From positions 17,632,387 to 17,693,988 of the forward strand of contig NC_068994.1 in assembly GCF_001194135.2 (NCBI RefSeq): DNA of 61,602 nt, in the 5' to 3' direction. Made by a program: the position numbers and the translations under genes. Below are positions 12,199 to 60,821 of the stretch, piece after piece. The stretch is from Octopus bimaculoides. Its lineage: Eukaryota. Numbering within the stretch: the stretch's first letter is position 1; every line of letters starts with the position of its first letter. The notes under the pieces are model-generated. The model was not told the origin of the DNA, ran no database searches, and saw nothing but the letters and a program-made list of their open reading frames with translations.

Positions 12199-12580
12199 AG
12201 GCGCAGGAGTGGCTGTGCGGTAAGTAGCTTGCTTACCAACCACATGGTTCCGGGTTCAGTCCCACTGCGTGGCACCTTGGGCAAGTGTCTTCTACTATAA
12301 CCTCGGGCTGACCAAAGCCTTGTGAGTGGATTTGGTAGACGGAAACTGAAAGAAGCCCGTTGTATATATGTATATGTTTGTGTGTCTGTGTTTCCCCACC
12401 CCCCATCGCTTGACAACCGATGCTGGTGTGGTTACGTCCCCGTAACTTAGCGGTTCGGCAAAAAGAGATCGATAGAATAAGTACTAGGCTTACAAAGATT
12501 AAGTCCTGGGGTCGATTTTCTCGACTAAAGGCAGTGCTCCAGCATGGCCGCAGTCAAATGACTGAAACAAGTAAAAGAGT
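12199..12580 (+). mobile_element. tRNA-derived SINE family B (GGCGCAGGAGTGGCTGTG...GAAACAAGTAAAAGAG)
   Basis: A/B boxes, CORE-like GGCACCTTGGGCAAGTGTCTT, internal (TA)n/(TG)n. Many other copies in the window. Confidence 0.85.
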
Positions 12581-13664
12581 ATGTGTAAAATTTAAGCATA
12601 CATTGTTGAACCCAACACATTCTGAGTGATTTAATCTGAGATATATCACAAGGTATTTGATAAATAGTTAACAGCAAATTAAAATATTTCAAGTTACATT
12701 ATTCTAAATATAAAACATGGAACAGAATTAAACAACTCAGAAAAACCTCATCAAATATATGTGAAAAGACCTATTTAGCACTGGAACAAGTCCTGTTTCT
12801 ACACACTGAATAAATCACTCGTGTCCAATGAATTGCAACACATTAACAACAATTAACCATTCGGACACAAACATATGCATGCTCACACACACACACACAC
12901 GTAGTTATGATCATCCTAATTCTTTTCCTGTGCTGTCATAAATTCAGTGTTAGTTTTATAGCAGATTATTACCGGTCTTAATCCTGTTCTATCTTACTTG
13001 TCAGGCCCATCATCTTGCAAGCTGATCTCATCACTTCCTCAACTTCTTATCATTACAGAATGTACTACCATCATGTTTGTGTGTGTGTATGTACATTATA
13101 AATATGTTGTCGTTGTTGTTGTTGTGTGAAAGAGCAGAGTGACACTGAGATACAAATATAAGAAACCCAGTATATGCATCATGACTACACGTCTGATAGG
13201 GGTACACCAGGCACCTGCATCACAACCATATGTGTGTGACACAGTGATCTCATATCAAGTTAAACAGCGCATGACCTTGCAGATGGGACCCAGTTAGAAT
13301 TTTCTTCAGGTCAAGTAGCCCATCCCACTCAAAAGGTCCCTGAATAAGAGTTGTTTAAGGATGTTGAACAAAACACCCATGTTTCCAAAGGTGAATTATT
13401 TAAACCCCAAAGAATTCCTCTCAACACATGGCTATGATGCTTCCCCACTACTTCTGCTCGTGATAAGAGATGCACATATCGTCGGCCATTAAGGAACTTG
13501 CTCAACTGGTTAATGTCAAGCAACTGACAAGCAAATCTGTGTATTGAGCAGAATATTTGCTGTTGCCCATCTTTTGATATCAAGACAAACCATGTACATG
13601 ATAACACTTTCAATCAGTTAGGATCAAAAGCCATGAGAGCCAGTGCCTGGTTTTGCATCATGGC

Positions 13665-22438: not shown

Positions 22439-22867
22439 TTTATGTATTCATTTTGCAAGATTCCTGATGGGAAATCATGTGTTGAAACATGTTATTCTTG
22501 GGGATGATCATACTTTGCCAATTAAACACATGCACTATATATTTAGTCTTCACTTCAGCTTTACTATTATTATTTTAGTATCTTTGTCAAAGATCTTTCT
22601 TCACACATCCTGGGACCTCATCAGTGACTTTTTAAGCCATGTATCTCCTCTTGTTCTTCTAATTCCACTTTTTGGGGGGTGGGGTAGAATAAGAAGAACA
22701 AGAGGAGATATGTGGGATAGAGGCTCATTGAAGAGGTCACAAGATGGATGATGAAAGAGCTTAGACAAAAAGACACTAAAATAAGAAAAATAATAAAGCT
22801 GAAATGAAGGCCATGTATATAGTGTACGTGTTTAATTGGCAAAAAATATAACCATCCCCAAATATAA
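22439..22867. mobile_element. Penelope-like non-autonomous element with inverted arms and hammerhead motif
   Basis: Arms of about 185 bp (22491-22669 / 22683-22868, roughly 75-80% identical). Flanked by CTATCATTTATTTATA (22423-22438) and CTATAATTTATTTATA (22868-22883). Confidence 0.65.
22586..22628 (-). ncRNA. Minimal type I hammerhead ribozyme-like motif (stem II decayed)
   Basis: The minus strand reads GTCA CTGATGA G GTCCC AGGATGT GTGAA GAAA GATC T T TGAC: intact core, 4-bp stem I (GUCA/UGAC), palindromic AGAUCU stem III. Confidence 0.55.
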
Positions 22868-22917: not shown

Positions 22918-23098
22918 GATTGGTAAACTGAAAACTTTGTCTGTTTTGGAAACAGAAAGTGTCTCAATGGGTTGGCTGTATTGGGGTTATGCTAAATTCA
23001 TCAGAAGTCCATTATCATGGGCTGTGAATTTAGCATCAAGCATGATTTCCAAGAATAATAAATGTCTTGAAGAAAGTGTGATGACAGAGGTCTTGAAG
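22918..23098 (+). CDS. CHMP7: CHMP7 exon 2 (IGKLKT...GWLYWGYAKFIRSPLSWAV...EVLK)
   Basis: Long pyrimidine tract + TTTCAG| acceptor, AAG|GTTAGT donor, phase fits exon 1. The Trp-rich segment resembles the CHMP7 membrane-binding insertion. Confidence 0.92.
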
Positions 23099-24982
23099 GT
23101 TAGTTATAACTTGTGTGTTCACTTAAAAAAAAATGTAACTGAAAGTTCACATCATAAGAATTTAGAAACTTTCAAGAGAATTTGAAATTCTATTTTTTTT
23201 TTTTTTTTTAATAATAGATCCCAAAGCACACATAAAGCTATAAATGATGGTATGTAAATATTGGATGGGAAAACCCTTTTAAAAGGCTGCATGTGGGACT
23301 CAAACCTCCATCCATGCCTGTTACTAAGGGATCTCATCAGTGACTGGAGAGCACTACTACCCCATCACTAACTATTTAATGGTTCACCCTCAGATTTACT
23401 CCACTTTAGCATTATTACAAGTTAGTGCCCACCCAGAATATTTTGAAACACTCCCAGGCACCAAAGTCTGATGGTGGACCTGCCTGCATCTCCTGTAGGC
23501 CATGACACATATTCTATCATTGGACCTGGGTTTGAATCCCATGGGCAGACTCTGACCTTTCGTATCCAAAAGCGTTTTTGCAACCTAATATTTATATGTT
23601 ATTATTTATAACTGTGTGTGTTTGAATATACTTTTTAATCATTTAAAATTGAGCCTCTTTACTTTTACTAAAGTGGTCTGCTTTTAATTATCCCTGTATT
23701 TCCTTTCCCATCAACTACAATTTTGACAGGAGAATGAAATAAAATTATTGATGTCTATTGTCCCAGTGATCAGTTAGATTTTACCTCTTTGCATATTTAC
23801 CTCTCTGCAGGGAAACTAGTATACTAGTATCTTATACATATTTCTATAATTTTATTGCCATTGTGGACCACCAGTCTTTCTAACAAATCTGACACAAACT
23901 GTTGCTTTCTACAATAAGAGTATCACAAGGAGAAATAGCATAGAAACAGCCATGACTGTGTGGTTAAGAAGCTTACTTCTCAACCATATGGTCTTAGGTT
24001 CAATCTCACTCTACAGCACCTTTGGCAAGTGTCTTTTGAAATAGCCCCAGGCCAACCAAAGCCTTGACAGTGGATTTGATTGATGGAAACTGAAAGAATC
24101 CCATGTGTGTTTGTATACATGTGTGTGTGTGTGTGTATTCATGTGTACCTTATCCAGACATCATGGTTGCAAATGAGCATCACCTTCATACAAGTGATGT
24201 TGTTTGTTTCCAGTCTTCCATGAAAAACATGTTTGGCTATGAGGAAATATTATCTTGCTAGGAAACAGGTGAGAGTTGATCACATGGAGGGCATCCAGCC
24301 ATAGAAAATCAGCCACAACAAATTTCAGCTGATCTATGCAAGAATGGTAAAGTGGATGTTAAATGATGAATGATGATGATGATAATGATTATTGTTGCAA
24401 ATGACATCTTGGAACAGACTTTACAAGACTACATAATTCACCATTAGTTAATACAGGGTATACATGGGTGATTTGCCTCACTGGCAGTATTAGCAATTTA
24501 CATGACCTGACACAGAAGTCAGTAATGTTGGTCTTCATTCTTCCTCTCCTTAAATAGAAACTCAGTGTATCACATAGGCATTATCATAGTCCCAAAGACA
24601 TGACCTCTGCTAGTAATGATTGTACATTGGTTGCATTGTAAATCAGGACTATTAGTCTGTGGAGAAAATATACTGTTCTAACAGTGAGCTGTCTAACTAA
24701 CAGAAAAGCTCCTCTGTTTCCGGTTGTTTTATCACAGTGATCCTTTAATATGATAAATCCTTGAGAAGCTGTTTGTAAATTGTTCACTTTGAAAACATGT
24801 TTATTAAAACAGAAAGTGAGAGTGAAGTATTTATATTTATAATATATATGAAAATAATCTTGTACTAGTTTTATTTCCCTTCATATTTATTCTCATGCAA
24901 GAAAATTCAGTCTTAACACTAAGTCATTAAAAAACATATATTAGCAACAGAGGCAGTATTAATACCAAGAGGTAATATCTTA

Positions 24983-25200
24983 TACTCTTTTTACTCTTTT
25001 ACCTGTTTCAGTCATTTGACTGTGTCCATGCTGGAGCACTGCCTTTAGTCAAGCAAATCGACCCCAGGACTTATTCTTTGGAAGCCTAGTACTTATTCTA
25101 TCGGTCTCTTTTGCCGAACTGCTAAGTTACGGGGACATAAACACACCAGCATCGGTTGTCAAGCAATGTTGGGGGGACAAACACAGACACACAAACACAT

Positions 25201-25246
<46 letters not shown>

Positions 25247-25410
25247 GACAGGCTTCTTTCAGTTTCCGTCTACCAAATCCACTCACAAGGCTTTGGGTCG
25301 GCCCGAGGCTATAGTAGAAGACACTTGCCCAAGGTGCCATGCAGTAGGACTGAACCCAGAACCATGTGGTTGGTAAGCAAGCTACTTACCACACAGCCAC
25401 TCCTGCACCT
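24983..25410 (-). mobile_element. SINE family B, full length
   Basis: Reverse complement of the family B consensus. Confidence 0.85.
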
Positions 25411-26547
25411 TATGTGGATATTCTGTTAGAGTAAACTATACTGCAGTAGATATCATGAGAAAAACTCTCGTATTGGCTTTTGGTGCAAAGTGCACTCATG
25501 TTTATACTGCTTGTGGGGAGATAAATCCCTGCCACCTCCAGTGTCATGAGCACCAGATCACATGATTTCAACCTTAATTGCTTATGAATCAATGATCACA
25601 AAACTACTATTTAATTATAGTCCTTTGTGTTCATAGTTTGTATCCCACCAAGGTTAATTACATCTTTCATCCTTCCAGAATCAGTAAAATAAAGTACTAG
25701 TCAAATACTAAGTCATTTTTATCAACTGATATTGATGCCTTCTAAGTGTCTTCAAGCAATGAGATTTTGACTAAAAATCCTAAAGAAATCTCAGTGTTAC
25801 TTGTGCTTTTAACCCTTCAGCATTCAGATTACTCTGTCAAATATAATCCTTATTTATTCACATTGTTTTGAATTAATCATGAATTAATCTTGTATTTCGA
25901 TTGTTATTATTGTATAGTTTTTAAATGATATTGTAGGATAGGCGTGTGAGGCTAGATCTAGCTGGTTTGAACAGAGAAAGGGTAGAGAATATTTGGGCCA
26001 GATATGGTTGGTTTAAATGCTAAAGAATTAAAGGATGGATGAAGGTATAAACCCCACCATATTCCTGTGAGTAGTATAACAATGACTACTCACTTAGGAT
26101 TATCTAAATGCTACATGTCCTATAATTAACAGGTCTGGAATGTGTTGATGGTAGTTATTGTAGCAGTGACATTGGCAGCACCAGTGGCATCTTTTAACCA
26201 TAGATTTTTGCATACTATCTGCTGCTGCTGAGATTCAGGTGGCCTCAGCTCTTATTTTGGCATTAGGGACCACCGGCATATTTGTTGTTGTTGTTGTATT
26301 TAAGCCAAGATCAGCCCTGCAGCTGTGATCATCCTCTCTTTTTGGAGATATGTAGGACTACACTGTCAAATGTGTCCTTTCCTGATTGAAAACAATAGGG
26401 TTTGATCTAAGAGAGGTCTGAGTGCTATTTCTTACTGATCAAAAAACAGTCTTGCAGGGGCTTCCCTCACTAGCTCATTAGCTAGATTCTCCATTTCGGG
26501 ATCTGTGTGTGTGTGTAACAAGAATAAGAATGGAGAAAATCACATCT

Positions 26548-26640
26548 CTAATTGTTGATTAATTACAGAAGAAAGGAGAGCAACTGTTAAGCATTCAATT
26601 AGAATGCATACTAACTCTCCAAGAGAGTGACATTATCGAT
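26548..26640 (+). pseudogene. Partial duplicate (pseudo-exon) of CHMP7 exon 3 including its 3' splice site
   Basis: 26569-26640 matches 28035-28106 at 61/72 nt (KKGEQLLSIQLECILTLQESDIID vs RKAEQLLSIHLERVRTHQESDIID). The upstream TAATTACAG mirrors TAATTGCAG. Confidence 0.9.
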
Positions 26641-28034
26641 TTTCTCCATTCTTATTCTTGTTGTCTGATTCTCTGAATTTCTTGAAGTGATATTTAGAGT
26701 TACTTGTCATACATGAAGTATTACTTTGGATGGCATCTGTGCCCAGCATCGTGTTCTTGGCACGTGTAAAGACATTTGAGCGAGATCGTTGCCAGTGCCG
26801 CTGGACTGGCTCCTGCTGCAATAAGCCAGTGGGGGGAATGTGTTGAATAAAATGATAATCAACTGATCCTCCTGTATTTTCTTTTACCCAAAGCCAGGAA
26901 AATTTCAGCACCGCTTTGTGTGTGTGTGTGTGTGTGTGTGTAACGATATGTAAATGTAAGATCCAAGGATCCAGGTGTAGGGAGTTAGTAAGCTTCAAGC
27001 AGCCTGTAGAAGGTATAAGATAGTTCATGGTTAGCAACTAGGGTTGCTATGTATGCGAACAGAAATCCAAATTGAGGGAATGGAGTAGGTAAAATCCAGG
27101 CTACACATGTTTCCTAGCCAGCAGAACTTCAGAAGTAATATTTACTCAATGAGGGGTATTCCACTAGCTACTCATCAGGTTGACAATACCTTAATTAAAT
27201 GGAGGTCAAATTGTCATCAAAGGATTCCAAGTTAACTCACAGAGTTAATCTCCTGCTAGTTAGGAAACATATGTAGCCTGAATTTTACCTACTCCTTTCC
27301 CTCAATTTAGATATACATACATATATATATATGTAAAGAGCAGTATATGTTCAGTGGTTTGATTGGTCATATCTCAGAGCAATACACACTTCTTCGATAA
27401 GAGGTTAACACCTTCTCCATTTAGTCATCATGGCCCTTGCTTACTACAATAAAGATACATAGTGTGTAATTTAAAAACAAATATTTCTTAGTTTCTATTT
27501 GCATGATCAGCTTCAGATAATCTTCATAACTTTACTATACTGTTGTTATTGTTGTTGTTTATTATATTGTTGTATCCCTTTGTTAACAGGTTGATTAGTG
27601 CAATAGTGTATGTTGGAAATGTTTAGCTTTTTTTGTTTTTTTGTTGTTTTTTTTAATTAGAAAAAGAAAAAGAAATTTCTATATAAAACTTTTGCAATAT
27701 CACCATTTGGATGTCTATACCAAATATATTATTAAAAATATTTTTTTTTACTCTTCATAATTAAAAAAAAAAAAATAAAAATTCATCTGTTGACATTAGA
27801 TAAATATTGTTATATGTAAAATATCCAGAACTATCAATTTCTTAAGTGTGTGTATGAGAGAGAGTAAATAAAAGTTTTATCATTCTAGGTTTGTATAAAA
27901 GTACAAAATAAACTGTTAAAATGCATATATGTATGCAAGTTTTTTTTTTTTTTCCGTTGTTGTTTTTAAGTCTATTGTGTGTTTATTTATATGCTTTCTA
28001 CCAAAGTTGGTGTTGTTGAAATATCTAATTGCAG

Positions 28035-28232
28035 AGGAAAGCAGAGCAGCTGTTAAGCATTCACTTAGAACGCGTGCGAACTCACCAGGAGAGTGACATT
28101 ATAGATTACAATAGTCTGGTGGAACAACATGCTGAGCTGTTCAAGGACAAGAGAGAAGTGCCATTGCTAGTGTCCTATTTAGTTAAACAGCAGAAGGCTC
28201 TCTTAATACCTCAGGGAAACAACAAAAATCCT
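28035..28232 (+). CDS. CHMP7: CHMP7 exon 3 (RKAEQLLSIH...PQGNNKNP)
   Basis: CTAATTGCAG| acceptor, CCT|GTATGT donor, 66 codons, phase 0/0. Confidence 0.9.
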
Positions 28233-28745
28233 GTATGTTCACTATATCGCATTCCTTTTGATAGTATGTAATTCTTCTGATGATCTGCAATGTTTGCCTT
28301 CTTTTTTTTTTGCTTGTTTCTTTCTTTTTTTGGGGTGAGGGTAATTTTTTATTAATTCTTTTTATTTTTTTTATATCTTTCTTTATCTTGATAATTGTGA
28401 GCAATGATTTAAGATCATAATAAAGTTATCTATAATAATAATAATTATAGATAACTTTATTATAATCTTAAATCATTGATCACAATTATCAAGATAAGAA
28501 AGATATAAAAAAATAATAATAATATTTTTTCCAAAACATAGACACCAGGCCAGAAATTTCAGGGGAGAGGTTTAGTCAAGTACTGGAATTGAGTGAATTG
28601 ACTCCAATATTTGACTGATTCAAGGCAGCAAGCTGGTAGAATCATTAGTACGCCTGGAAAAATGCTTAGCAGCATTTGTCTATCTTTATGTTCAGAGTTC
28701 AAATTCCACTGAGGTTAACTTTGCTTTTCATCCTTTTGGTGTTGA

Positions 28746-29258
28746 CAAAATAAGTACCAGTTGAGCACTGAGTTTGATAAAATAAGTTCTAGTTGAGCAC
28801 TGGGGTAGATAAAATAAGTTCCAGTTGAGCACTGGGGTAGATAAAATAAGTTCCAGTTGAGCACTGGGGTTGATAAAATAAATACCAGTTGAGCACTGGG
28901 GTTGATAAAATAAGTACCAGTTGAGCACTGGTGTTGATAAAATAAGTACCAGTTGAGCACTGGGGTTGACAAGATNNNNNNNNNNATAAGTACCAGTTGA
29001 GCACTGGGGTTGACAAGATAAGTACCAGTTGAACACTGGGGTCGATAAAATAAGTACCAATTGAGCACTGGTGTTGATAAAATAAGTACCAATTGAGCAC
29101 TGGTGTTGATAAAATAAGTACCAGTTGAGCACTGGGGTTGACAAGATAAGTACCAGTTGAACACTGGGGTCGATAAAATAAGTACCAGTTGAACACTGGG
29201 GTCGATAAAATAAGTACCAGTTGAGCACTGGTGTTGATAAAATAAGTACCAGTTGAGT
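28746..29258 (+). repeat. About 16 tandem copies of a 32-bp unit (ATAAAATAAGTACCAGTTGAGCACTGGGGTTG) inside a family C SINE
   Basis: Periodicity is directly visible. The array contains a 10-N gap (28976-28985), so copy number is uncertain. Confidence 0.9.
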
Positions 29259-30149
29259 ACTACACCAGGTTGGACATATCCCATGTGCTGGATCATTGAT
29301 ATTTTTTATTCAATTCTGATTTGTCTTTCCCATCACTTTAGTCTGCTACAACAGCAAAGACTGAAATTACTGAATGGTAACAGAAACAACTATTGATACT
29401 TAGTCATATTTTGTAATATTGTTTTTTTATTTTTTTTATTGCTGGATATTATTAATTGTTATTGAAAACTCACTTTAGAAGTGTTTGAAATTGTCTTTGA
29501 GTTAAGTCAAAGCTGACCAAGTAAACTAATTGAGAACAATTTTGCACAAAGACAAAATGAGAAAATATACTCTCTTTTCACAAATTTAAAAAATGTCAAA
29601 CATGACAGAGGCTCCTATTCTTTACATTAGGCCTATATTCCCTCTCTCTCTTTACCTCTCTCTGTCTTTCTCTCACTCTCTCTACCTCTCTCTATTTATC
29701 TCTCGCTCTCTCTCATATTTTTACTCCTTCTCACTTTTACTCTTACATATCTACAATCCCCTATTTATGTATTCATAAATATATGTGTATGCACAATCAC
29801 ATCACATCTTGTCACTTAAGAAACAATTCTTTATTCTTTTATCAGCAGAAACAATGAAGTGTTATATGAATTGTCCTTTTTAGAAATTTTATCTCAAGTC
29901 CACTATAAACTGAGAATTGTCTATCTAAGCAGAAAAGGTTTTACAATGACATAAAATCTCTACAAAGAAGCCTTTTGTTTATTTTTGAATCAGCCCCTGT
30001 AGCTGAACATCATGTTATTTTCTTTGGGGTTTTTTTGGTGGGGTGGGGTGGTGGGTTTATCAAGATTTGAACTTAGAAACAAGAAACTTCATATTTAAAA
30101 GATCCATCGTTTGTTGTGTCAGACACCTCAAAGACACTAGTGCAGTATT

Positions 30150-30540
30150 TACTCTTTTACTCTTTTACTTGTTTCAGTCATTTGACTGCGGCCATGCTGG
30201 AGCACCACCTTTAGTCGAGCAAATAGACCCCAGGACTTATTCTTTGGAAGCCTAGTACTTATTCTATCGGTCCCCGCTAAGTTACGGGGATGTAAACACA
30301 CCACCATTGGTTGTCAAGCGATGGTGGGGGGACAAACACAGACACACAAACNNNNNNNNNNTATATATATACATATATACGACGGGCTTCTTTCAGTTTC
30401 TGTCTACCAAATCCATTCACAAGGCTTTGGTCGGCCTGAGGCTATAGTAGAAAACACTTGCCCAAGGTGCCACGCAGTGGGACTGAACCCGGAACCATGT
30501 GGTTGGTAAGCAAGCTACTTACTACAGAGCCACTCCTGCG
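30150..30540 (-). mobile_element. SINE family B
   Basis: Reverse complement of the consensus, with a 10-N gap inside its microsatellite. Confidence 0.8.
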
Positions 30541-31195: not shown

Positions 31196-31397
31196 TTACT
31201 CTTTACGATTTTACTTGTTTCAGCACCGCCTTTAGTCGAGCAAATCGACCCCAGGACTTATTCTTTAGAAGCCTAGTACTTATTCTATCGGTCTCTTTTG
31301 CCGGACCGCTAAGTTACGGGGACGTAAACATACCAGCATCGGTTGTCAAGCGATGTTGGGGGGACAAACACAGACACACAAACACATACACACATAC

Positions 31398-31430
<33 letters not shown>

Positions 31431-31602
31431 TATATACATATATACGACGGGCTTCTTTCAGTTTCCGTCTACCAAATCCACTCACAAGGCTTCGGTCGGC
31501 CCGAGGCTATAGTAGAAGACACTTGCCCAAGATGCCACACAGTGGGACTGAACCCAGAACCATGTGGTTGGTAAGCAAGCTACTTACCACAGAGCCACTC
31601 CT
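31196..31602 (-). mobile_element. SINE family B, starting about 60 nt after exon 4
   Basis: Reverse complement of the consensus, CpG-rich (young). Confidence 0.8.
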
Positions 31603-33450: not shown

Positions 33451-34370
33451 TCACACGTTTGAGAAATAAATTTATTTCTGTATATTACCTTGCTTGATTA
33501 AGAAGGAAATGGAATAAAATTTGTGGAACACTCACTCGATAGATTGCACATGAAAACCTACTTGACAGTCTGTCAAGAGCTGCATATTAATATGCCCAGA
33601 GGATATTGCTGCATTCAAGCTGAGTTCAACATCAAGAATGCTAATGGATGTGAGTATGGGTTGGCAACAGGAAGGACATCTGACCATAAAAAATCTGCCA
33701 TAATAAACTGTCCTATCCATGCAAGCATAGAAAAGTGGACGTTAAAACAATGATGATATGCAGTGTGGGTTAAAGTTCTTGAGTTTCATACACTTTTTAT
33801 GAAAGTAAATTAATCAAAAATAAATATTTCTGAATAACTATTTATGTGACGTTTCTATTTTCTTCTCACCTTGTCTTCAATTATTTTATGCTTCACTATG
33901 TAACTATCTTTGTAACAATTATACTTTTTTTATGACACAACCTCCAACCTCTGTATAACTACAATAATTTCACATCTATCTGCAATAGATAGCTATCTTA
34001 CAATAGCTGGAGCTGGCATCCTTCCCACTCTCAGGTATAAGAACAGAAAGAAAATATCACCCTCAAAGGACAAATGGATTAAATCTTTATGATTTATGAG
34101 TTATGGATTATAATAGTTAATATTGTGGTTATATGCAATCTTTTTCACAGGAGCTGAACAGCTCCTTTCTTAGCATTGGTACTAAAGAGGAGATGACCCA
34201 GTAGAAAAAATAAGAAACAAGAAACTAATTTGAGATTTACAGTCTCAAGATCAAATCCATTCAAGTGAGGGAAGATTGGTTGAATCTTTCATATTACTGA
34301 AGATTTTTCACTATTTTACTGCTATCTACTAATTCACTATTTGATATCTTTTTTTCTTCTTTTTCCACAG

Positions 34371-37109: not shown

Positions 37110-39246
37110 CAATGATGAGGATAATGATGACTGTAATGAAGAAATCTAACTTTCAAATGTGTCTTTCATTATAGAGAAGAGAGAAAACTGGTCTCCTTAC
37201 TAGATTTACTAGAAATTACTGCATAATTAAAACATTCCACTGTCTGAACAAATTATTGTTAGTTTCACTTTTACTTTCATATTTCTACAGTGTGCTTACA
37301 TCTGTTTCAATGTTCTTGTACTTTATCTTGCTGATTTGTTGTGGTAATGTTTTTGGTTTGTCAGAATGCATTGGTTTTCATTTTTCTTTTTGATTGTGGA
37401 ATATCTTTCATCTTTTATCTTTTACTTATTTCAATCACTGGACTGTGGCCATGCTGAGGCACCGCTTTGAAGGGTTTTGTTAAACAGATCAACCCCAGTC
37501 CTTGTTTTTTTGTTTTAAGTCTGTTACTTATTCTATTGGTCACGTTTGCTGAACTGCTAAGTTACAGGGATGTTTTGAGGAAAGCAGAATAAAAATCATT
37601 TTCAGTGCCAGGAGCTGTTGATAAGGAAGCTAAGGTGTCCTCTCACACTGGGACCACCCCATTGTCTTGTGAGTATGAAGAGTAAAATGGAGACTAGATA
37701 AAAGTGGCAAACTGTTGAGGACAATAGAGAGAGGGGGAAAAGAAAGGAAAAGAGAGTCCGTGCAGAAAACAAGCAAGATCCAAAAAGAGGAATTCATCTC
37801 TTTCTGCGAAGTCATGAGATTTGCAATTCTTCAAATCACCAACACAGAGCTGATGAATTGTCCAAACTGCCATGGGTGACAATATGCTGATTAAGAAGGA
37901 ATTGGAATAAGATTTTGTGGAACACTCACTCGATAGATTGCACATGAAAACCTAATTGATAGTCTGTCAAGAGCTGCATATTAATATGCCCAGAGGATAT
38001 TGCAGCATTCAAGCTGAGTTCAACATCAAGAATGCTAATGGATGCTTCCAGGAGCAAAAGATACTTGAGGTCATGGGATACACTAAATCAACCTATGTGG
38101 CACCTTCTCTCCAGCGTGAATGGTTTGCCTTTATTTAATTTGTGTAATTCATGTGTTTATTCTCCTTTGTTCTCTTTTACTTGTTTCGGCCATTAAACAC
38201 ACCAACACCAGTTGTCAAGCAGGGAAAACACAGACACAAAGACACACACACATAGATGTATAAATATATATACATATACAACAGGCTTCTTTCAGTTTCC
38301 GTCTACCAAATCTACTCACAAGGCTTTGGTTGGCCTGAGGCTATAGTAGAAGACCTAAGGTGCCATGCAGTGAGATTGAACCCAAAGCAATGTGGTTGGG
38401 AAGCAAACTTCTTACCACACAGCCATGCCTGCACTTATTTGTTTACCAATTTTTAATTACTCCTCCCTAAAATTGCTGGCCATATGCCTAAATTAGAAAC
38501 AATTATTATTATTATTTAGTAGGATGGTATATTGACAAACACATTAAAGTATTAGACAAAATACCTTGCATACTTGTCCTATTATTCACTATAATCAGCT
38601 ATTCTCTCTGTCCAAATTTCTGGTCTTGTGTGACTATGTTAGAAACTGTTGTTGTTGTTATTATCATTTGATAGCATGCTGAGCAAAATGCTTAGTGGCA
38701 TTTTCTCCCTCTTAACATTCTGAGTTCATCCTTTTGAGGTCAATAAAATAAGCACCAGTTGAGCACTGGGGTCAATATAATTGATTCAACTCCTCTCCTG
38801 AAATTGCTGGCCTTGTGCCAAAATTTGAAACCATTACTATTATTGTTAAGGTGGCAAGCTGGCAGGATCGTTAGCGTTTCATCCATCTTTACATTCTGAG
38901 TTCAAATTCCACCAAGATCAACTTTGCTTTCATCCTTTTGGTGTTGATAAAATAAGTACCAGTCAATGTAATTGGTTAGCTTCCTCCTCCAAACTTTCAG
39001 ACCTTGTGCCTATAGTAGGAAGGACAATAATAATTTACTTTACTTTTGTATCTGGTTTGCAAGATTCTTTATATGGATTTGTGTGTTGAAACAAATTTTG
39101 TTGTGTCTAGAGAGAGTCATTATGCCAGTATATTAACACACACACTGGTTCAGTTCAACTCATTTATTCTTAGTCAGTTGGTATAATGACTCTCCCTAGA
39201 CACGACAAAAGATAATAATAATAATTATTATTATTGTTTTGTTTTG

Positions 39247-42295: not shown

Positions 42296-42701
42296 TTCCG
42301 TTTATATATTTGTTTTGCAAGATTTTTGATGTGAAATCATGTGTTGAAACAGATATTGTTTTATTTGGGGATGGTCATATTGCCAGTTTAGCCAATAAAA
42401 ACACACGCACTATATATTTGGTGTTAATTTGCTTCAGCTTTACATTACATTAATCGTATTTCAGCCAGAGTTCTTTCATCACACTTCTGTGACCTCATCA
42501 GTGGTCCTTTGCTTTCTTCTTTCTTATTTGTGTGTCCCTCCTTGCTAATGATGAGGTCACAGAAGTGTAACGAAAGAACTCTGGCCGAAATATGATTAAT
42601 GTAATGTGATGTAATATAAAGCTGAAGCAAATTAACACCAAATATACAATGCGTGTGTTTTTATTGACTAAACTGGCAATATGACCATCCCCAAATACAA
42701 C
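42296..42701. mobile_element. Penelope-like non-autonomous element with inverted arms and hammerhead motif
   Basis: Arms about 42355-42500 / 42550-42701. A perfect 15-bp direct repeat AATAATGAAACATTC lies at 42281-42295 and 42702-42716. Confidence 0.7.
42465..42504 (-). ncRNA. Minimal type I hammerhead ribozyme-like motif
   Basis: The minus strand reads CCA CTGATGA G GTCAC AGAAGT GTGAT GAAA GAAC TC TGG: core intact, stem II GUCAC/GUGAU, stem I CCA/UGG, UC cleavage site. Confidence 0.6.
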
Positions 42702-43846
42702 AATAATGAAACATTCACTGATAGGGAACACAATATTAACAGTAAAGTCAAATTTACTGTAAAATTTGTTTTGATTTGGGTTTCAAATTTTGTCTAACAC
42801 CTTATTTAAACAGGACTGGTTGAATAAGCTGTTAGGTGAAACTTAAAGTTCCAGTCAACACGAAAGTTATGATCCCTAAACACACACATATATATTCTTT
42901 TATGTGTGTCAAACCCAAAAGCCATGACAATGCTGGGACAGTCAACCAGATGGCCATTTTTGAATGAGATTCTCTAAGAGGTTTATGTGTGTAAATGCAG
43001 TGTGCACATTGTTCATGTGCACAATGATGGCATATTCATAATGATGAAAAAGTTTTTCTTGAATTTGTTGCACTTTGATGGAGATCTAAAAGACTGGAAG
43101 TAAGGCAATGTTAATTATTATTTTTTTTTTGTATCCAGCGTTAAATTAATACATTGTATATCAAGTCTTCCATCTACTTTTAACTCGGATATTCTACATC
43201 ACCAACACATGGCAATTTTTTTACTCATTATGTATAACTTGTGCAAATCATCATCACCACCATTGTTTAATGTCTATTTTCCATACTTGCATGAGTCAGA
43301 CGGAAGTTGTTGAAATGAATTTTCTGTGGCTGGATGCTGTTCCTGTCACCAACTAAGGTATTTCCTCATGACCAGACATGTTTTTACAGAAGATTGGAAA
43401 TGAAGGACACCACTTGCGTAATGGTGACACTCCTTTACATCTATCACATAAAGGAATAATAAATATGCTCATGTACATACATGCACACACACACACACAC
43501 ATGCATACATGCTCACACACATACAAACGCATGTGCATACATGCTCACACACACACACATATAAACATATACAACAGGTTTCTTTCAGTTTCCATCTACC
43601 AAATTCACTCACAAGGTTTTGGTTAGCTTTTACAGTCATCATCGTCATCATCGTCATTTAACATCTGCTTTGAATGATGATGATAACATCTGTAAAAGCC
43701 AACCACAGCCTTGTGAGTGAATTTGGTAGATGGAAACTAAAAGAAACCTATTGTATATGTTTATATTAGTAAGTTAAAAAAATAAAAATCAATATTTGTT
43801 TTAAGCATTTCTGCAACATTTCAGTATTATTTATTTCTTAATTCAG

Positions 43847-45043: not shown

Positions 45044-45617
45044 CAATTAAAAGGGTAAAGGTTTATCAATTTATTAATTTATTAATAAATCAACAATTAA
45101 TAATTTTTACCAAGCCCTTCGGTATGTAAACACCATTATCGCTGAACTTATTTAACAGTTCTTATACATTTATAAACATAATTAAGGGATCAGCAAACAT
45201 TTGCTTCACCACATACCGAAGTTCAGAAATAGCAGCTAAAAAAACTGAGACTCCAACAGATAGCATTACCTGTAACTCACAAAGGCAAAAACAAGAAGAA
45301 AAAACAATGAAAACTAACCATTCGAAGTTAATCATAGACGCGTTTCTGGATTATGAGCGATAATACTCAATTTCCTTCATTGGTATGATATTCTAGTAGT
45401 AAATTCGACGATCCTAGCAGACTGTGCATGCATGAACGAGTGAACATCATGCATCGGCACAACCTGAAAGCACAACCAAACCTACATCGGCCAGCCAGTC
45501 CACTATTTCTTCCTCAAGAAATTACCATGTGCGTCACAAGCAATACCGCAGAAAATTTGCGGTTTACTATCAGGGAGTGAATAATTATTACAAGCAAATG
45601 TTTGCTGATCCTTTAAT

Positions 45618-45709
<92 letters not shown>

Positions 45710-47728: not shown

Positions 47729-47760
<32 letters not shown>

Positions 47761-47849
47761 CATATATATATTTATAGATACATATATATATATATGTATG
47801 TGTGTGTGTATATATGTATATATATATACATGTGTATATATATGTATAT

Positions 47850-47893
<44 letters not shown>

Positions 47894-48090
47894 GTATTGC
47901 ACCAAATAACCAGCTGGAGGAGACATACTCTTAGGGTTAAAATGTGTTTTAAAATGTGTTTTGTTTTTGTTTTTATTTTTGTATATATATATATGTATGT
48001 ATATATATATGTGTATATATATGTGTGTATATTTATATATGTATATATATATGTGTATATATATATGTGTATATATATGTGTGTATATGT

Positions 48091-48142
<52 letters not shown>

Positions 48143-48224
48143 GTATATATGTATATGTATATATGTATATTATGTATATATGTATATGTATATATGTATA
48201 TTATGTGTATATGTATATATATAT

Positions 48225-48458: not shown

Positions 48459-48633
48459 ACTCTTGGAGAACAGGAAGAAGTTAGCCACTTGTTGGCCAAT
48501 GCTTGGCCAGATTCCAATGAAGATTCTGAAGCATTAGAGGATGAGTTGCAGAAATTGATCAAAGAAGAGGAAAGTGCTGCAGAAGATGAGGCTCTTGCCA
48601 AATCACTTTCCAATTTGAGGATTCAAGATAAAT
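48459..48633 (+). CDS. CHMP7: CHMP7 exon 9 ([12 protein letters not shown]...[10 protein letters not shown]...[13 protein letters not shown])
   Basis: TCTTGCAG| acceptor, T|GTGAGT donor. Contains the acidic helix 5 and a class-1a NES-like motif L-x3-L-x2-L-x-I. Confidence 0.92.
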
Positions 48634-48720: not shown

Positions 48721-48948
48721 TATCACCACTTGAACATAGCTGCTCCATAGAAACCAACATTATTACCATTTTAACCCCAAGAGTATGCCTCCTCCAGCTG
48801 GTTATTTGGTGCAATCTGCACCTGATATATATTTCAATATATATCAGGTGCAGATTGCATTGAATAACCAGCTGGAGAAGGCATCCTCCTGGGGTTAAAA
48901 TGGTAGTAATGTTGGTTCCTACAGAACAACTATGTTTAAGTGGTGATA
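48721..48948. repeat. 228-bp palindrome, 113-bp arms; inner part is a TTAA-CCC...GGG-TTAA piggyBac-like MITE
   Basis: The arms differ at about 13 of 113 positions, almost all transitions. The centre is TT-TC-AA at 48834/48835. Confidence 0.9.
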
Positions 48949-49834: not shown

Positions 49835-49893
49835 CGGTGTTTGTCCATTTTTTTTNNNNNNNNNNCATGCTTGCATGTGCACCCCCCTACCAC

Positions 49894-50689: not shown

Positions 50690-51190
50690 GAGTACATATA
50701 TAAATTCAAAAATGGCAGAATTCTGCTTTAAGCAACCCATATAACTCCTCATAACTTTTTTATTTTTTCCTTTTTGAACTTTCAGAAATATTTTGCAAAT
50801 TTGTATTCTACACAGGAATTCATATGACTATGAAAAAAAATTTTTTTTTTTTTTTTCCTTAAATCAGTTTAAAATATGGACAGTCTGAATTTTTTGCTTA
50901 AATCTCAGCAATACACCATTAAATGCATTTATAGGGAGAAAGATTTTGAAATTCATTAATACATTTAACAAGAGGTGTATCAGGTGATCATGAGATGTGC
51001 TAAAAATAACAGCTAAATAGCCCTTAAATAATAGACATTCCCCCCCTCCCCCTCATGATTGTATAAATCCCCATGTGTAGAACACAAATTCGCAAAAATT
51101 TTGTGAAAATTCCAAAAAATAAAAAAGTTATGAGGGATTATATGGGGTCTTTAAAGCAAAATTCCACTTCAAAAACATACATATGTTTGA
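50690..51190. mobile_element. MITE with about 130-bp imperfect TIRs
   Basis: GAATTCTGCTTTAAGCAACCCATATAACTCCTCATAACTTTTT...TTCTACACA is mirrored by TGTGTAGAAC...AAAAAGTTATGAGGGATTATATGGGGTCTTTAAAGCAAAATTC. Confidence 0.65.
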
Positions 51191-52858: not shown

Positions 52859-53564
52859 NNNNNNNNNNNNNNNNNNNNNNNNNNNNNNNNNNNNNNNNNN
52901 NNNNNNNNNNNNNNNNNNNNNNNNNNNNNNNNNNNNNNNNNNNNNNNNNNNNNNNNNNNNNNNNNNNNNNNNNNNNNNNNNNNNNNNNNNNNNNNNNNNN
53001 NNNNNNNNNNNNNNNNNNNNNNNNNNNNNNNNNNNNNNNNNNNNNNNNNNNNNNNNNNNNNNNNNNNNNNNNNNNNNNNNNNNNNNNNNNNNNNNNNNNN
53101 NNNNNNNNNNNNNNNNNNNNNNNNNNNNNNNNNNNNNNNNNNNNNNNNNNNNNNNNNNNNNNNNNNNNNNNNNNNNNNNNNNNNNNNNNNNNNNNNNNNN
53201 NNNNNNNNNNNNNNNNNNNNNNNNNNNNNNNNNNNNNNNNNNNNNNNNNNNNNNNNNNNNNNNNNNNNNNNNNNNNNNNNNNNNNNNNNNNNNNNNNNNN
53301 NNNNNNNNNNNNNNNNNNNNNNNNNNNNNNNNNNNNNNNNNNNNNNNNNNNNNNNNNNNNNNNNNNNNNNNNNNNNNNNNNNNNNNNNNNNNNNNNNNNN
53401 NNNNNNNNNNNNNNNNNNNNNNNNNNNNNNNNNNNNNNNNNNNNNNNNNNNNNNNNNNNNNNNNNNNNNNNNNNNNNNNNNNNNNNNNNNNNNNNNNNNN
53501 NNNNNNNNNNNNNNNNNNNNNNNNNNNNNNNNNNNNNNNNNNNNNNNNNNNNNNNNNNNNNNNN
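52859..53564. other. Assembly gap (706 N); 10-N gaps also at 28976-28985, 30352-30361 and 49856-49865
   Basis: Runs of N. Confidence 0.99.
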
Positions 53565-58478: not shown

Positions 58479-59402
58479 TAAATATATGTACCATGCATCT
58501 GCTAATTTTTTTTTTGGATACCTATATAATCACAAGCAGATATAGACACTGAGAGAGAGTGTATATGTGTGTGTGTGTGTGTGTAAATGTCTCCTAAAGC
58601 CTGTAATAGTTTTTTAAGGGTCAGTGCTGAATTCCACTTCCGTACTATGAAACAGATGAGAATTAAATTCTTCCCTCGATAGAAAACCAAATTATTTCAG
58701 GTAACATCCCTTAGTAATCTGTTACTTAATCCACTTGACAAGCTGACTGGTCTAATAATAGAAGCAAGGAAATTCCTACAGCTAATTTTCACTCCTGACC
58801 TATATTTAGTTTTACCTCGATGATATTATATATTGTGTGTGTTAAGAAATTAGTTTCCCAACAAGAATTTTTTGGATCCAGTCCCACTTCATAGCACCTT
58901 GATCAAATGTCTTCAAATATAACCCTGGGCTCACCAAAGCCTTGTGAGTGGATTTAGTACATGGAAACTGAAAGAAGTTCATCATAAGTATTACTATCTT
59001 ATTGTATTTTCATCTACTAGTAGAAGACACTTACCCATGGTGCTGCACAGTGGGACTGAACCTGAAACCATATGGTTGCAAAGTGATCTTCTTAATCACA
59101 CACTCTGGCATCTTCTTGTGAGTGAATTTGGTAGACAGAAACTGAAAAAAAGCCTGTATTTATATATGTGTGTGAGTGTGTGTGTTTGTCCCCCATCACT
59201 ACTTGACAACTGGTGTCGGTTTGTTTATGTCCCCATAACTTAGTGGTTTGGCAAAAAGCTACCAACAGAATAAGTACCAAGCTTAAAAAAGAAAAATAAG
59301 TACTGGGGTCAATTCATTTGGCTAAAAAGTTCTTCAAAGTGGGTGCCCCAGCATGGTCACAGTATAATGACTGAAACAGATAAAAGACATATATATATAC
59401 AT

Positions 59403-59567
59403 GGCGCAGGAGTGGCTGTGTGGTAAGTAGCTTGCTTACCAACCACATGGTTCTGGGTTCATTCCCACTGCGTGGTACCTTGGGCAAGTGTCTTCTACTA
59501 TAGCCTCGGGCCGACCAAAGCCTTGTGAGTGGATTTGGTAGATGGAAACTGAAAGAAGCCCATCGTA

Positions 59568-59628
<61 letters not shown>

Positions 59629-59837
59629 GTGTGTCTGTGTTTCCCCCCCCCCCAACATCACTTGACAACCGATGCTGGTGTGTTTACGTCCCCGTAAGCT
59701 AGCGGTTCGGCAAAAGAGACCGATAGAATAAGTACTAGGCTTCCAAAGAATAAGTCCTGGGGTCGATTTGCTCGACTAAAGGCGGTGCTCCAGCATGGCC
59801 ACAGTCAAAAGACTGAAACAAGAAAAAGAGTAAAGAG
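59403..59837 (+). mobile_element. SINE family B, full length
   Basis: Matches the consensus. Older copies are adjacent (about 58850-59390 and 60113-60470); others lie at about 21405-21825, 35140-35500 and 39710-40080. Confidence 0.85.
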
Positions 59838-60821
59838 TATATAAAATTGTTTAGGAATTGAAAATGCACTTGGATCTTAAAACAAATTTTAGTTCTTTCA
59901 AAATTTTTGTGTTTATAGAAATACCAGTCTCAACATTTTTTCTTTTGTTTTTCTCTGGTAAATGAAAATTAAAAAAAAGAAAGGAATGCTCAAGAGTAAG
60001 TTTCATGGTGATAAAACATGCTCAAAAGTTTATAAATGTTCAATAAGGCAGTCAGCCAACCAGAATGCTGTGTCACAGCTTGGCAAAAGCAAGTTACATC
60101 TTAAACAACCTAAGGGCAGAGTGGCTGTGTGTTAAGCAGCTTGCTTACTAACCACATGGTTCTAGGTTCAGTCCCACTGCGTGGCACTTTGAGCAAACAT
60201 CTACTATAGCCTCGGGTCAACCAAAGCCTTGTGAGTGGATTTGGTAGACGGAAACTGAAAGAAACTTGTTGTATATGTGTGTGTGTCTGTGCCCCCTACC
60301 ATCGCTTGACAACCAATGCTGGTGTATTTATGTCCCTGAAACTTAGTTATTCAGCAAAAGAGACCAATAGAATAAGTACTAGGCTTATAAAGAATATGTC
60401 CTGGGGGCGATTTGTTCGACTAAAGGGCGATGCTCCAGCATGGCCGCAGTCAAATGACTGAAACAAATAAAAGGATATATAAAGCAATATCAGCTTGAAA
60501 AGTAGTTCATGTTCAATATCTGGAATGAGAAAAGCAAGCAAAAAGCAATTCTGCTTCACACCATGCAAAAGAGCTTGTAAAAAATTTTCCTTATTCTTAA
60601 AAATCTTCCATCATGTCAAATTGCTGCCATAATTTATTTCTATGAAATTTATTGAACTTTCAAATTTCTAATATGTATTTTTGCTATGAAATTTATCACA
60701 CATTTGAACTTTCAACATCTATTATTGCTGTGAAACTTATTTAACACTTGAATTTTCATCATTCAATGTAATTTTTCTATGAAGCCTATTGAACATTTGA
60801 TTTTTAAGCATAGAGTATTGA

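What the first reader, a model, noticed from the sequence alone, without database searches (positions are those of the whole stretch)
26517..26676. Duplicated CHMP7 exon-3 start held in the loop of a perfect 25-bp hairpin (candidate structure-gated poison exon)
Seen: 26517-26541 (AACAAGAATAAGAATGGAGAAAATC) and 26638-26662 are perfect reverse complements. The 96-nt loop holds a copy of the exon 3 acceptor and first 24 codons (61/72 nt). The copy switches into the right arm at a GATT microhomology shared with exon 3. Splicing exon 2 to 26569 stays in frame for 35 aa, then hits TGA (26674-26676). About 8 of 11 changes are non-synonymous, consistent with neutral coding decay, yet the stem is perfect. 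Inference: a templated insertion or template switch created a competing upstream acceptor, and the hairpin may silence or regulate it. A-to-I editing of the A-rich arm could open it, giving NMD or a truncated WH1-only product.
Basis: partly seen in the sequence, partly recalled or inferred. Interest (0 to 1): 0.72.

Follow-up and report, generated by a model that had tools for sequence, protein, structure and literature searches.

The report
Exon-fragment copy framed by inverted repeat
A roughly 90-base copy of the start of CHMP7 exon 3 sits 1.4 kb upstream in the preceding intron between two perfectly complementary 25-base arms; it is most likely a decaying scar of DNA repair or replication template switching, and nothing here shows that it regulates splicing.

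Summary
Positions 26517-26541 and 26638-26662 are perfect reverse complements, with 96 nt between them. The loop carries an 82-nt copy (possibly about 90 nt) of the exon-3 acceptor plus the first 72 exon bases. It is 85% identical to 28026-28107. It ends at a GATT that also begins the right arm. Read from exon 2, it gives 35 codons and then TGA. The gene is CHMP7 (Pfam WHD_CHMP7 and Snf7, both above threshold).

Homology to exon 3 stops at the arms, and the arms do not derive from exon 3. There is no target-site duplication, and no second copy of the arm in the window. The copy has decayed neutrally towards AT: 10 of 12 changes fall at G/C sites, and GC drops from 0.46 to 0.36.

The best reading is a short, local, microhomology-mediated templated insertion with a fold-back inverted repeat. 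Its arms are either younger than the copy or were re-homogenised by template switching. The main rival is a Pack-TIR-like capture between transposon ends.

The "structure-gated poison exon / ADAR switch" idea is untested and weakly disfavoured. The acceptor lies in the loop. The first donor-like site is 260 nt downstream. Similar inverted repeats are common in these introns. No comparative or expression data could be reached.

The parts
26517..26541 (+). Left arm of the inverted repeat. It is purine-rich (28% GC) and directly abuts a (TG)n run at 26504-26516.
   Evidence: Not homologous to the exon-3 region (p=0.24).
26542..26551 (+). 10 nt of unassigned origin (ACATCTCTAA) between the left arm and the start of detectable exon-3-region homology.
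   Evidence: No significant match to the parent region or elsewhere in the window.
26552..26568 (+). Copy of the last roughly 23 nt of intron 2 upstream of exon 3, including the acceptor TAATTACAG (parent TAATTGCAG). It probably carries a 5-nt deletion relative to the parent.
   Evidence: The AG is at 26567-26568. Local pyrimidine content is about the same as at the real exon-3 acceptor (0.61 against 0.56).
26569..26641 (+). Copy of the first 73 nt of exon 3 (codons 1-24 plus one base), 61/72 identical over the codons. Its last 4 nt (GATT) overlap the right arm.
   Evidence: Ten of 12 changes are at parental G/C sites; GC falls from 0.46 to 0.36.
26638..26662 (+). Right arm of the inverted repeat, the exact reverse complement of the left arm. 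It begins with the GATT microhomology.
   Evidence: Not homologous to the continuation of exon 3 (p=0.23).
26674..26676 (+). In-frame TGA that would terminate translation if exon 2 were spliced to 26569.
28012..28107 (+). Parent segment: the end of intron 2 plus the first 73 nt of the genuine CHMP7 exon 3 (exon 3 = 28035-28232).
   Evidence: Pfam WHD_CHMP7 starts at the first exon-3 residue.
22918..23098 (+). CHMP7 exon 2. It ends in phase 0 with donor AAG|GTTAGT.

Best explanation
This is a small local rearrangement scar in CHMP7 intron 2, made by microhomology-mediated template switching during break repair or replication.

Proposed mechanism. A 3' end copied about 82-90 nt from the exon-3 acceptor region 1.4 kb downstream on the same strand. 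Fold-back (reverse-complement) synthesis on the 25 nt next to the break or stall produced the inverted repeat. The GATT shared by exon 3, the copy and the arm marks one switch or annealing point. The (TG)n run abutting the left arm is a plausible stall or break site.

After its birth the exon fragment decayed neutrally towards the AT-rich intron composition. The arms are perfect for one of two reasons. Either the inverted repeat was made by a later, second template switch that overwrote one side, or recurrent template switching re-homogenised it (quasi-palindrome correction). Neither needs selection.

In the pre-mRNA the 25-bp stem will very probably form and loop out a decoy acceptor. I infer that this has no selected function and that the decoy is rarely or never used.

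Shown: the anatomy, the sharp bounds of the homology, the microhomology, the neutral decay, the absence of transposon hallmarks within the window, and the thermodynamic stability of the stem.
Inferred: the repair or replication mechanism, the order of events, and the lack of function.
For: - The copy is short and sharply bounded. The flanks outside the arms, and the arms themselves, match the parent no better than shuffles. This excludes a decayed larger duplication.
- The parent lies in cis, 1,385 nt away, in the same orientation.
- There is a 4-nt microhomology exactly at the copy/right-arm junction.
- There is no target-site duplication beyond GT/GT. The inverted repeat ends abruptly, with no degenerate extension outward or inward (and direct reading).
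- The arm occurs nowhere else in the 61.6-kb window even with 3 mismatches, nor in the scanned collections. Those collections hold no cephalopod genomes.
- Decay is neutral and AT-biased: 10 of 12 changes at G/C sites, 6 of them G>A, 7 non-synonymous to 4 synonymous, CpG count from 3 to 1.
- If the arms were as old as the copy, about 2.7-5.5 arm-breaking changes would be expected (P of none = 0.004-0.065). So the arms are younger or have been corrected.
- Template switching is documented to create perfect inverted repeats and hairpins in one step, and to homogenise imperfect arms (PMC5453318; PMC8794818; PMC8604942).
- Pol theta repair is documented to give multi-patch templated inserts from nearby sequence, including snap-back reverse-complement patches (PMC5068794).
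- Other short two-copy local duplications exist in the window, so such events are not rare here.
Against: - No orthologous or population sequence could be obtained, so neither the order of events nor the ancestral state is observed.
- Documented snap-back and template-switch patches are mostly under 25-60 nt and lie close to their template. In the C. elegans mutagenesis data, snap-back is a minor class and only about 3% of inserts map to distant sites. An 82-90-nt patch from 1.4 kb away plus a 25-nt fold-back across a 96-nt spacer is at the large end.
- The explanation needs either two events or ongoing homogenisation to account for perfect arms beside a 15%-diverged loop. Other inverted repeats in this window are visibly decaying (77-91% arm identity), so homogenisation is not general here.
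- The absence of the arm elsewhere was tested in only 61 kb of the genome.
Confidence: 0.5

Rival explanations
1. Pack-TIR-like capture. The two arms are the terminal inverted repeats of a small DNA transposon, a MITE or a foldback element of the kind common in these introns. Its interior was lost at a break or excision and refilled by gap repair that switched template to nearby exon 3 and returned through the GATT microhomology.
For: - The architecture TIR-filler-TIR, 146 bp in total, is MITE-sized.
- It matches the properties reported for single-copy animal Pack-TIRs: parent under 5 kb away in cis, microhomology at breakpoints (median 2 bp), small captured pieces, and exons over-represented (PMC8277862).
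- The window is rich in inverted-repeat elements, including a two-member MITE-like family at 22510-22847 and 42354-42705 and a 160-bp palindrome at 28360-28519. Palindromes are fragile and could supply the break.
- The 10 unassigned nt (26542-26551) could be a remnant of the element's interior.
Against: - There is no target-site duplication (only GT/GT; the 8-mers match 5/8).
- The termini (AACAAG...) resemble no other inverted-repeat element in the window. The resemblance to the 22.6-kb hairpin arm (p=0.02 before multiple-test correction) has the wrong polarity for a shared TIR, and the resemblance to the 27-kb element is at chance level (p=0.43).
- No second copy of the arm and no transposase ORF occur in the window.
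- If the element predates the capture, its TIRs should be at least as diverged as the 15%-diverged filler, yet they are perfect.
Confidence: 0.25
2. The duplicate created a competing upstream acceptor, a poison exon with a premature stop. The perfect hairpin is kept by selection to silence or gate it. ADAR editing or unwinding of the stem would switch on NMD or a truncated product that keeps the N-terminal part of CHMP7 and lacks the second winged-helix and Snf7 domains.
For: - The decoy acceptor (ACAG|A) is intact, and its local context is as good as the weak genuine exon-3 acceptor.
- The frame from exon 2 is open for 35 codons before TGA.
- The stem is significantly better preserved than the loop.
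- The stem is predicted to form in RNA: MFE -57.4 kcal/mol, z = -4.7, and it is present in the centroid structure.
- Control of splice-site use by RNA structure is an established phenomenon (PMC2724269, PMC8052449, PMC11802352).
- Exon 3 starts the WHD_CHMP7 domain, so a truncated product would lack it.
Against: - The AG and the branch-point region lie in the 96-nt loop and are not paired.
- No donor-like site scores above 0 within 260 nt, and later candidates score 1.9 or less. Real donors in this gene score from about 0.2 to 8.7 on the same rough, memory-derived matrix.
- The copy shows plain neutral decay. A single point mutation in the AG would remove a harmful decoy more simply than a 25-bp stem.
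- Perfect arms have non-selective explanations.
- Many comparable hairpins occur in neighbouring introns.
- No expression, editing or conservation data could be reached.
Confidence: 0.06
3. Assembly or sequencing artefact. A chimeric or fold-back read, or a local mis-join, introduced an inverted 25-mer or the whole insert into a draft assembly.
For: - The window is from a gapped draft assembly, with four N runs at 28976-28985, 30352-30361, 49856-49865 and 52859-53564.
- Perfect inverted junctions with microhomology are a known form of library chimera (general knowledge).
Against: - The nearest gap is 2.3 kb away, and the feature lies in uninterrupted sequence.
- The exon copy is 15% diverged with an AT-biased spectrum. 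That is evolutionary decay and not a copying artefact.
- An artefact would have to explain only the arm. That arm sits exactly at the end of the homology with clean microhomology, as a biological switch would.
Confidence: 0.05

Closest known systems
Short template-switch mutations (four-point model; quasi-palindrome correction): Loytynoja & Goldman 2017 (PMC5453318), Monttinen & Loytynoja 2022 (PMC8794818), Abraham & Hazkani-Covo 2021 (PMC8604942)
   Same: A reverse-complement copy of adjacent sequence creates a perfect inverted repeat or hairpin in one step. The process can also re-homogenise arms without selection. It produces sharply bounded repeats flanked by dissimilar sequence.
   Different: Published events are mostly a few to tens of nt with short spacers. 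The yeast study searched spacers of 70 nt or less, and the largest rRNA pattern was 59 bp. Here the spacer is 96 nt, and the structure also contains a direct 82-90-nt copy from 1.4 kb away. A single four-point event does not produce that.
Polymerase-theta-mediated end joining with templated (flank and snap-back) insertions: van Schendel et al. 2016 (PMC5068794), Kent et al. 2016 (PMC4912351)
   Same: Inserts are built from one or more patches copied from nearby DNA in direct or reverse-complement orientation, joined at 1-to-few-nt microhomologies. Synthesis is error-prone, about 1 error per 30 nt in templated inserts.
   Different: Typical inserts are under 25 nt, and about 85% are primed within 10 bp of the break. 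Distant templates are about 3% of cases and snap-back is a minor class. The enzyme cannot be identified from the sequence. Error-prone synthesis explains at most about 3 of the 12 differences.
Single-copy Pack-TIRs in animals (transposition-independent gap filling): Tan et al. 2021 (PMC8277862)
   Same: A non-transposon fragment lies between terminal inverted repeats, as a single copy, with the parent under 5 kb away in cis, microhomology at a breakpoint, a small size, and exon-derived content.
   Different: The arms could not be assigned to any transposon family. There is no target-site duplication. The arms are less diverged than the cargo.
RNA-structure control of splice-site choice (looping-out or sequestration; decoy or poison exons): e.g. 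PMC2724269, PMC8052449, PMC11802352
   Same: An intronic stem brackets a splice acceptor, with a premature stop in frame downstream.
   Different: Established cases rest on conserved or covarying stems and observed isoforms. Here there is no conservation or expression evidence, the acceptor is unpaired, and there is no convincing donor.

Membership tests
Template-switch / fold-back templated insertion (repair or replication scar) | The inserted segment is a copy of nearby sequence, with sharp boundaries | tested here: met
   The 82-nt core scores 58 against a null maximum of 12. The flanks and arms match no better than shuffles. The parent is 1,385 nt away in cis.
Template-switch / fold-back templated insertion (repair or replication scar) | A reverse-complement patch copied from immediately adjacent sequence, identical at birth | tested here: met
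   The 25/25 perfect inverted repeat has arms 96 nt apart, is sharply bounded, and has no degenerate extension.
Template-switch / fold-back templated insertion (repair or replication scar) | Microhomology at switch junctions | tested here: met
   GATT is shared by the parent (28104-28107), the end of the copy and the start of the right arm. The other junctions cannot be assessed without the ancestral sequence.
Template-switch / fold-back templated insertion (repair or replication scar) | An ancestral or orthologous allele that lacks the insert or the inverted arm | not testable with these tools
   No cephalopod sequence could be reached.
MITE / Pack-TIR (DNA-transposon ends with captured host DNA) | Target-site duplication flanking the terminal inverted repeats | tested here: not met
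   The flanks are ...GTGTGTGT | GTCTGATT.... Only GT is shared, and the 8-mers match 5/8.
MITE / Pack-TIR (DNA-transposon ends with captured host DNA) | The terminal inverted repeats belong to a repeated transposon family | tested here: inconclusive
   There is no other copy in the 61.6-kb window with up to 3 mismatches. Resemblances to other inverted-repeat elements are at chance level or have the wrong polarity. The rest of the genome was not available.
MITE / Pack-TIR (DNA-transposon ends with captured host DNA) | The internal non-transposon fragment has an identifiable parent not linked to a transposon, usually in cis within 15 kb, with breakpoint microhomology | tested here: met
   Criteria are taken from PMC8277862.
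Structure-regulated poison/decoy exon | A usable 3' and 5' splice-site pair defining an exon with an in-frame premature stop | tested here: inconclusive
   The acceptor is intact and equals the weak genuine one, and TGA follows after 35 codons. No donor-like site lies within 260 nt, and only weak ones lie beyond. The donor matrix was rough and recalled from memory.
Structure-regulated poison/decoy exon | The stem is conserved or covaries across species | not testable with these tools
   No orthologous loci were available.
Structure-regulated poison/decoy exon | Observed inclusion isoform or editing in the stem | not testable with these tools
   No transcriptome access. No paper combines CHMP7 and cephalopods.
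CHMP7 (host gene) | N-terminal CHMP7 winged-helix domain plus C-terminal Snf7 domain | tested here: met
   WHD_CHMP7 scores 30.3 bits (cut-off 27). Snf7 scores 50.1 bits (cut-off 27.3).
Known structured RNA family (miRNA precursor etc.) | Match to an Rfam covariance model | tested here: not met
   No hit at 26517-26662 on either strand, even at E up to 1. A 96-nt loop is also atypical for a miRNA precursor.

The most novel reading that the evidence does not exclude
The perfect 25-bp stem is kept by selection because it gates a decoy acceptor or poison exon of CHMP7. When the stem is intact the exon-3 look-alike is looped out and ignored. When ADAR editing (abundant in coleoid nervous tissue) or a helicase weakens the A-rich/U-rich stem, the decoy competes with genuine exon 3, which lowers CHMP7 through NMD or gives a truncated N-terminal protein. 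This would be a recently born, structure-switched autoregulatory module created by a single template-switch mutation.
Probability: 0.05. Interest if true: 0.7.

Novelty: new member of a known kind. Interest (0 to 1): 0.22.

Why it matters
As a scar, it is a clean natural example of how local template switching can copy a functional splice acceptor plus coding sequence into an upstream intron and wrap it in a perfect hairpin at the same time. That is raw material for new exons, decoy splice sites, dsRNA editing substrates or small-RNA hairpins.

The contrast between a perfect stem and a 15%-decayed loop is a useful caution. Perfect stems next to decayed sequence do not by themselves indicate selection, because template switching both makes and repairs them.

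If the functional reading were true, it would show a young structure-gated poison exon in an ESCRT-III / nuclear-envelope repair gene. Nothing found here points that way.

Tried and rejected
- Comparative data. The search for homologous proteins with the exon 2+3 peptide returned nothing, so the look-up of encoding contigs could not be seeded. The one metagenome scan, with a pattern matching both exon and copy, gave a single unrelated chance hit (L001). Arm scans of genome contigs and viral contigs were empty; those collections hold no cephalopod genomes.
- A larger decayed duplication. Rejected: the flanks beyond the arms match no better than shuffles. The apparent GAAGTG..ATT resumption after the right arm is at chance level (p=0.54).
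- Arms derived from exon 3 or its intron. Rejected.
- A shared family with nearby inverted-repeat elements. The 27-kb element gave p=0.43. The 22.6-kb hairpin gave p=0.02 uncorrected, with reversed polarity relative to the loop. Rejected as a TIR family.
- Error-prone synthesis as the sole cause of the 15% divergence. Rejected: about 1 error per 30 nt explains at most about 3 of 12 changes and does not explain the AT-biased, CpG-depleting spectrum.
- A known RNA family or miRNA. No hit.
- A transposase nearby. None among ORFs of 110 aa or more.
- The upstream near-repeat of the junction (26476-26495 against 26631-26650, 16/20) was considered as evidence for which arm is ancestral. It was left as unexplained or possible chance.
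Full report
**Observation.**
Positions 26517-26541 (AACAAGAATAAGAATGGAGAAAATC) and 26638-26662 are exact reverse complements, separated by 96 nt. The 25-mer occurs nowhere else in the window even with three mismatches, and none is expected by chance.

The spacer holds a copy of the end of intron 2 and the start of exon 3. Positions 26560-26641 align without gaps to 28026-28107 at 70/82. A collinear TTGTTGA suggests the copy may begin at 26552 with a 5-nt deletion, although that extension is not significant on its own. The last four homologous bases, GATT, are also the first four bases of the right arm.

Exon 2 (22918-23098) ends on a complete codon. Reading on from 26569 gives 35 codons and then TGA at 26674-26676. 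Over the 72 exon bases there are 11 differences, 7 non-synonymous and 4 synonymous.

**Host gene.**
The gene is CHMP7, on the + strand. A probe from memory (human CHMP7) located exons at about 9.1, 22.9, 31.0, 43.8, 44.8 and 48.5 kb. Pfam then confirmed the identity above the curated thresholds. WHD_CHMP7 scores 30.3 bits against a cut-off of 27 and starts exactly at the first residue of exon 3. Snf7 scores 50.1 bits against a cut-off of 27.3. Exon 3 is 28035-28232. I could not verify the organism.

**What the structure is.**
The homology to exon 3 is sharply bounded by the arms. Neither the 137 nt to the left, nor the 138 nt to the right, nor the arms themselves match the parent region better than shuffled sequence. 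This excludes a larger duplication that has since decayed, because neutral flanks at around 70-75% identity would have been detected easily.

The element is therefore arm (25 nt) + 10 unassigned nt + about 90 nt of exon-3-region copy, whose last 4 nt overlap the second arm (25 nt). The total is 146 bp. The inverted repeat ends abruptly at both its outer and inner limits. The flanks share only GT, so there is no target-site duplication. A (TG)n run abuts the left arm.

**Age signal.**
Ten of the 12 parent-to-copy changes fall at parental G/C sites, and six are G>A. CpG count drops from 3 to 1. GC drops from 0.46 to 0.36, close to the intron background of about 0.35. This is the signature of neutral decay of the copy.

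Applying the same site-class rates to the 50 arm positions predicts 2.7-5.5 arm-breaking changes. The range depends on how many of the differences are assigned to the copy lineage. The probability of seeing none is 0.004-0.065. So the arms are younger than the copy, or they have been corrected, or they are constrained.

**Context.**
These introns are full of short-range inverted repeats. There are 25 exact, non-simple inverted repeats of 14 nt or more within 400 nt, against about 0 in shuffles. They include:
- a MITE-like foldback family with two members, at 22510-22847 and 42354-42705, which share termini;
- a 160-bp near-palindrome at 28360-28519, just downstream of exon 3;
- several others.

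The candidate's termini match none of them convincingly. There is no transposase ORF in the window. Two other short, two-copy direct local duplications occur in the window. The window comes from a gapped draft assembly, but the nearest gap is 2.3 kb away. No Rfam family matches the hairpin on either strand.

**Mechanism.**
The best-supported origin is microhomology-mediated template switching. The insert is templated, made of a direct patch from 1.4 kb downstream in cis and a reverse-complement patch from the 25 nt next to the junction.

Both kinds of patch and their microhomologous joins are documented for Pol-theta-type end joining, including snap-back synthesis (PMC5068794). They are also documented for replication template-switch mutations, which create perfect inverted repeats and hairpins in one step (PMC5453318; PMC8794818).

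The perfect arms beside a decayed loop can be explained without selection in two ways. A second, later template switch could have written one arm from the other, using the GATT in the copy as the primer. Alternatively, the arms could have been homogenised (PMC8604942). Which arm is ancestral cannot be decided from the window. A 16/20 resemblance between 26476-26495 and the copy/right-arm junction hints that right-arm-like sequence pre-existed locally, but it may be chance.

**Main rival.**
The main rival is a Pack-TIR-like capture: a small TIR or foldback element whose interior was replaced by gap repair templated on nearby exon 3. It shares the reported hallmarks of single-copy animal Pack-TIRs, namely cis bias under 5 kb, breakpoint microhomology, small size and exon enrichment (PMC8277862). 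The local abundance of palindromic elements also makes it plausible.

Against it are the missing target-site duplication, the lack of any family assignment, and the fact that TIRs older than the cargo should be at least as diverged as the cargo.

**Function.**
As RNA, the 25-bp stem is predicted to form. The MFE is -57.4 kcal/mol, z = -4.7, and the stem is present in the centroid structure. It also forms as single-stranded DNA (z = -7.6). It would loop out an intact decoy acceptor whose local context equals that of the weak genuine exon-3 acceptor.

The case for a regulated poison exon is weak, for four reasons:
- The AG is unpaired.
- No donor-like GT scores above background within 260 nt, and the later candidates are weak. 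This rests on a rough matrix recalled from memory.
- The copy decays neutrally.
- The perfect stem does not require selection.

RNA-structure control of splicing is well established in general, so the idea is legitimate. But nothing here supports it, and it could not be tested. No cephalopod proteins, loci or papers on CHMP7 could be reached.

**Verdict.**
This is a new instance of a known kind of mutational scar, of modest interest. I estimate about a 5% chance that it is a selected, structure-gated decoy exon.

Noticed in passing
window 28360-28519: A 160-bp near-perfect palindrome (about 91% self-complementary, 7-nt centre) lies in intron 3, about 128 nt downstream of the exon-3 donor. Rfam gives only generic miRNA-hairpin hits far below threshold.
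   Followed up: partly
window 22510-22847 and 42354-42705: Two foldback/MITE-like elements (338 and 352 bp) share termini (TATTTGGGGATGGT...TTGCCA). The first lies just upstream of exon 2 and contains an inner 79-nt hairpin (22637-22715). The purine-rich arm of that hairpin loosely resembles the candidate's arm (p=0.02 uncorrected, wrong polarity).
   Followed up: partly
window 27048-27329; 43555-43770; 48744-48925; 45168-45630; 50715-51167: Further inverted-repeat elements with 77-90% complementary arms lie in CHMP7 introns. Overall the window has 25 exact non-simple inverted repeats of 14 nt or more within 400 nt, against about 0 in shuffles.
   Followed up: partly
window 24977-25421 (also 59393-59847, 31222-31602, 12199-12581, 30150-30539 and others): A dispersed repeat of about 420 bp (SINE-like) has at least 9 copies in both orientations at 71-92% identity. 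About 32% of the window is covered by within-window repeats.
   Followed up: no
window 26476-26495 vs 26631-26650: CATTAGCTAGATTCTCCATT, upstream of the left arm, matches the exon-copy/right-arm junction CATTATCGATTTTCTCCATT at 16/20. So the upstream GATTCTCCATT is also nearly complementary to the inner left arm. This is either a possible ancestral quasi-palindrome that seeded the switch or chance (rough estimate p about 0.05-0.15).
   Followed up: partly
window 26504-26516 and 26917-26944: A (TG)n microsatellite directly abuts the left arm. An identical (TG)nTAAC string recurs 400 nt downstream. (TG)n tracts are plausible fork-stalling or break sites.
   Followed up: no
window 33495-33650 / 37888-38044 and 38459-38519 / 38789-38850: Two other short two-copy direct local duplications (157 nt at 96%; 62 nt at 84%) show that small local duplications recur in this region.
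   Followed up: no
window 28737-29261; N runs at 28976-28985, 30352-30361, 49856-49865, 52859-53564: A 32-nt tandem array (about 16 units) in intron 3 is interrupted by a 10-N gap. Four assembly gaps in total mark this as a draft assembly. The 706-N gap explains the GC dip at 52-54 kb.
   Followed up: partly
window 47729-48170: A large low-complexity (TA/CA-rich) region forms extensive imperfect inverted repeats immediately upstream of the last mapped CHMP7 coding exon (about 48471-48557).
   Followed up: no
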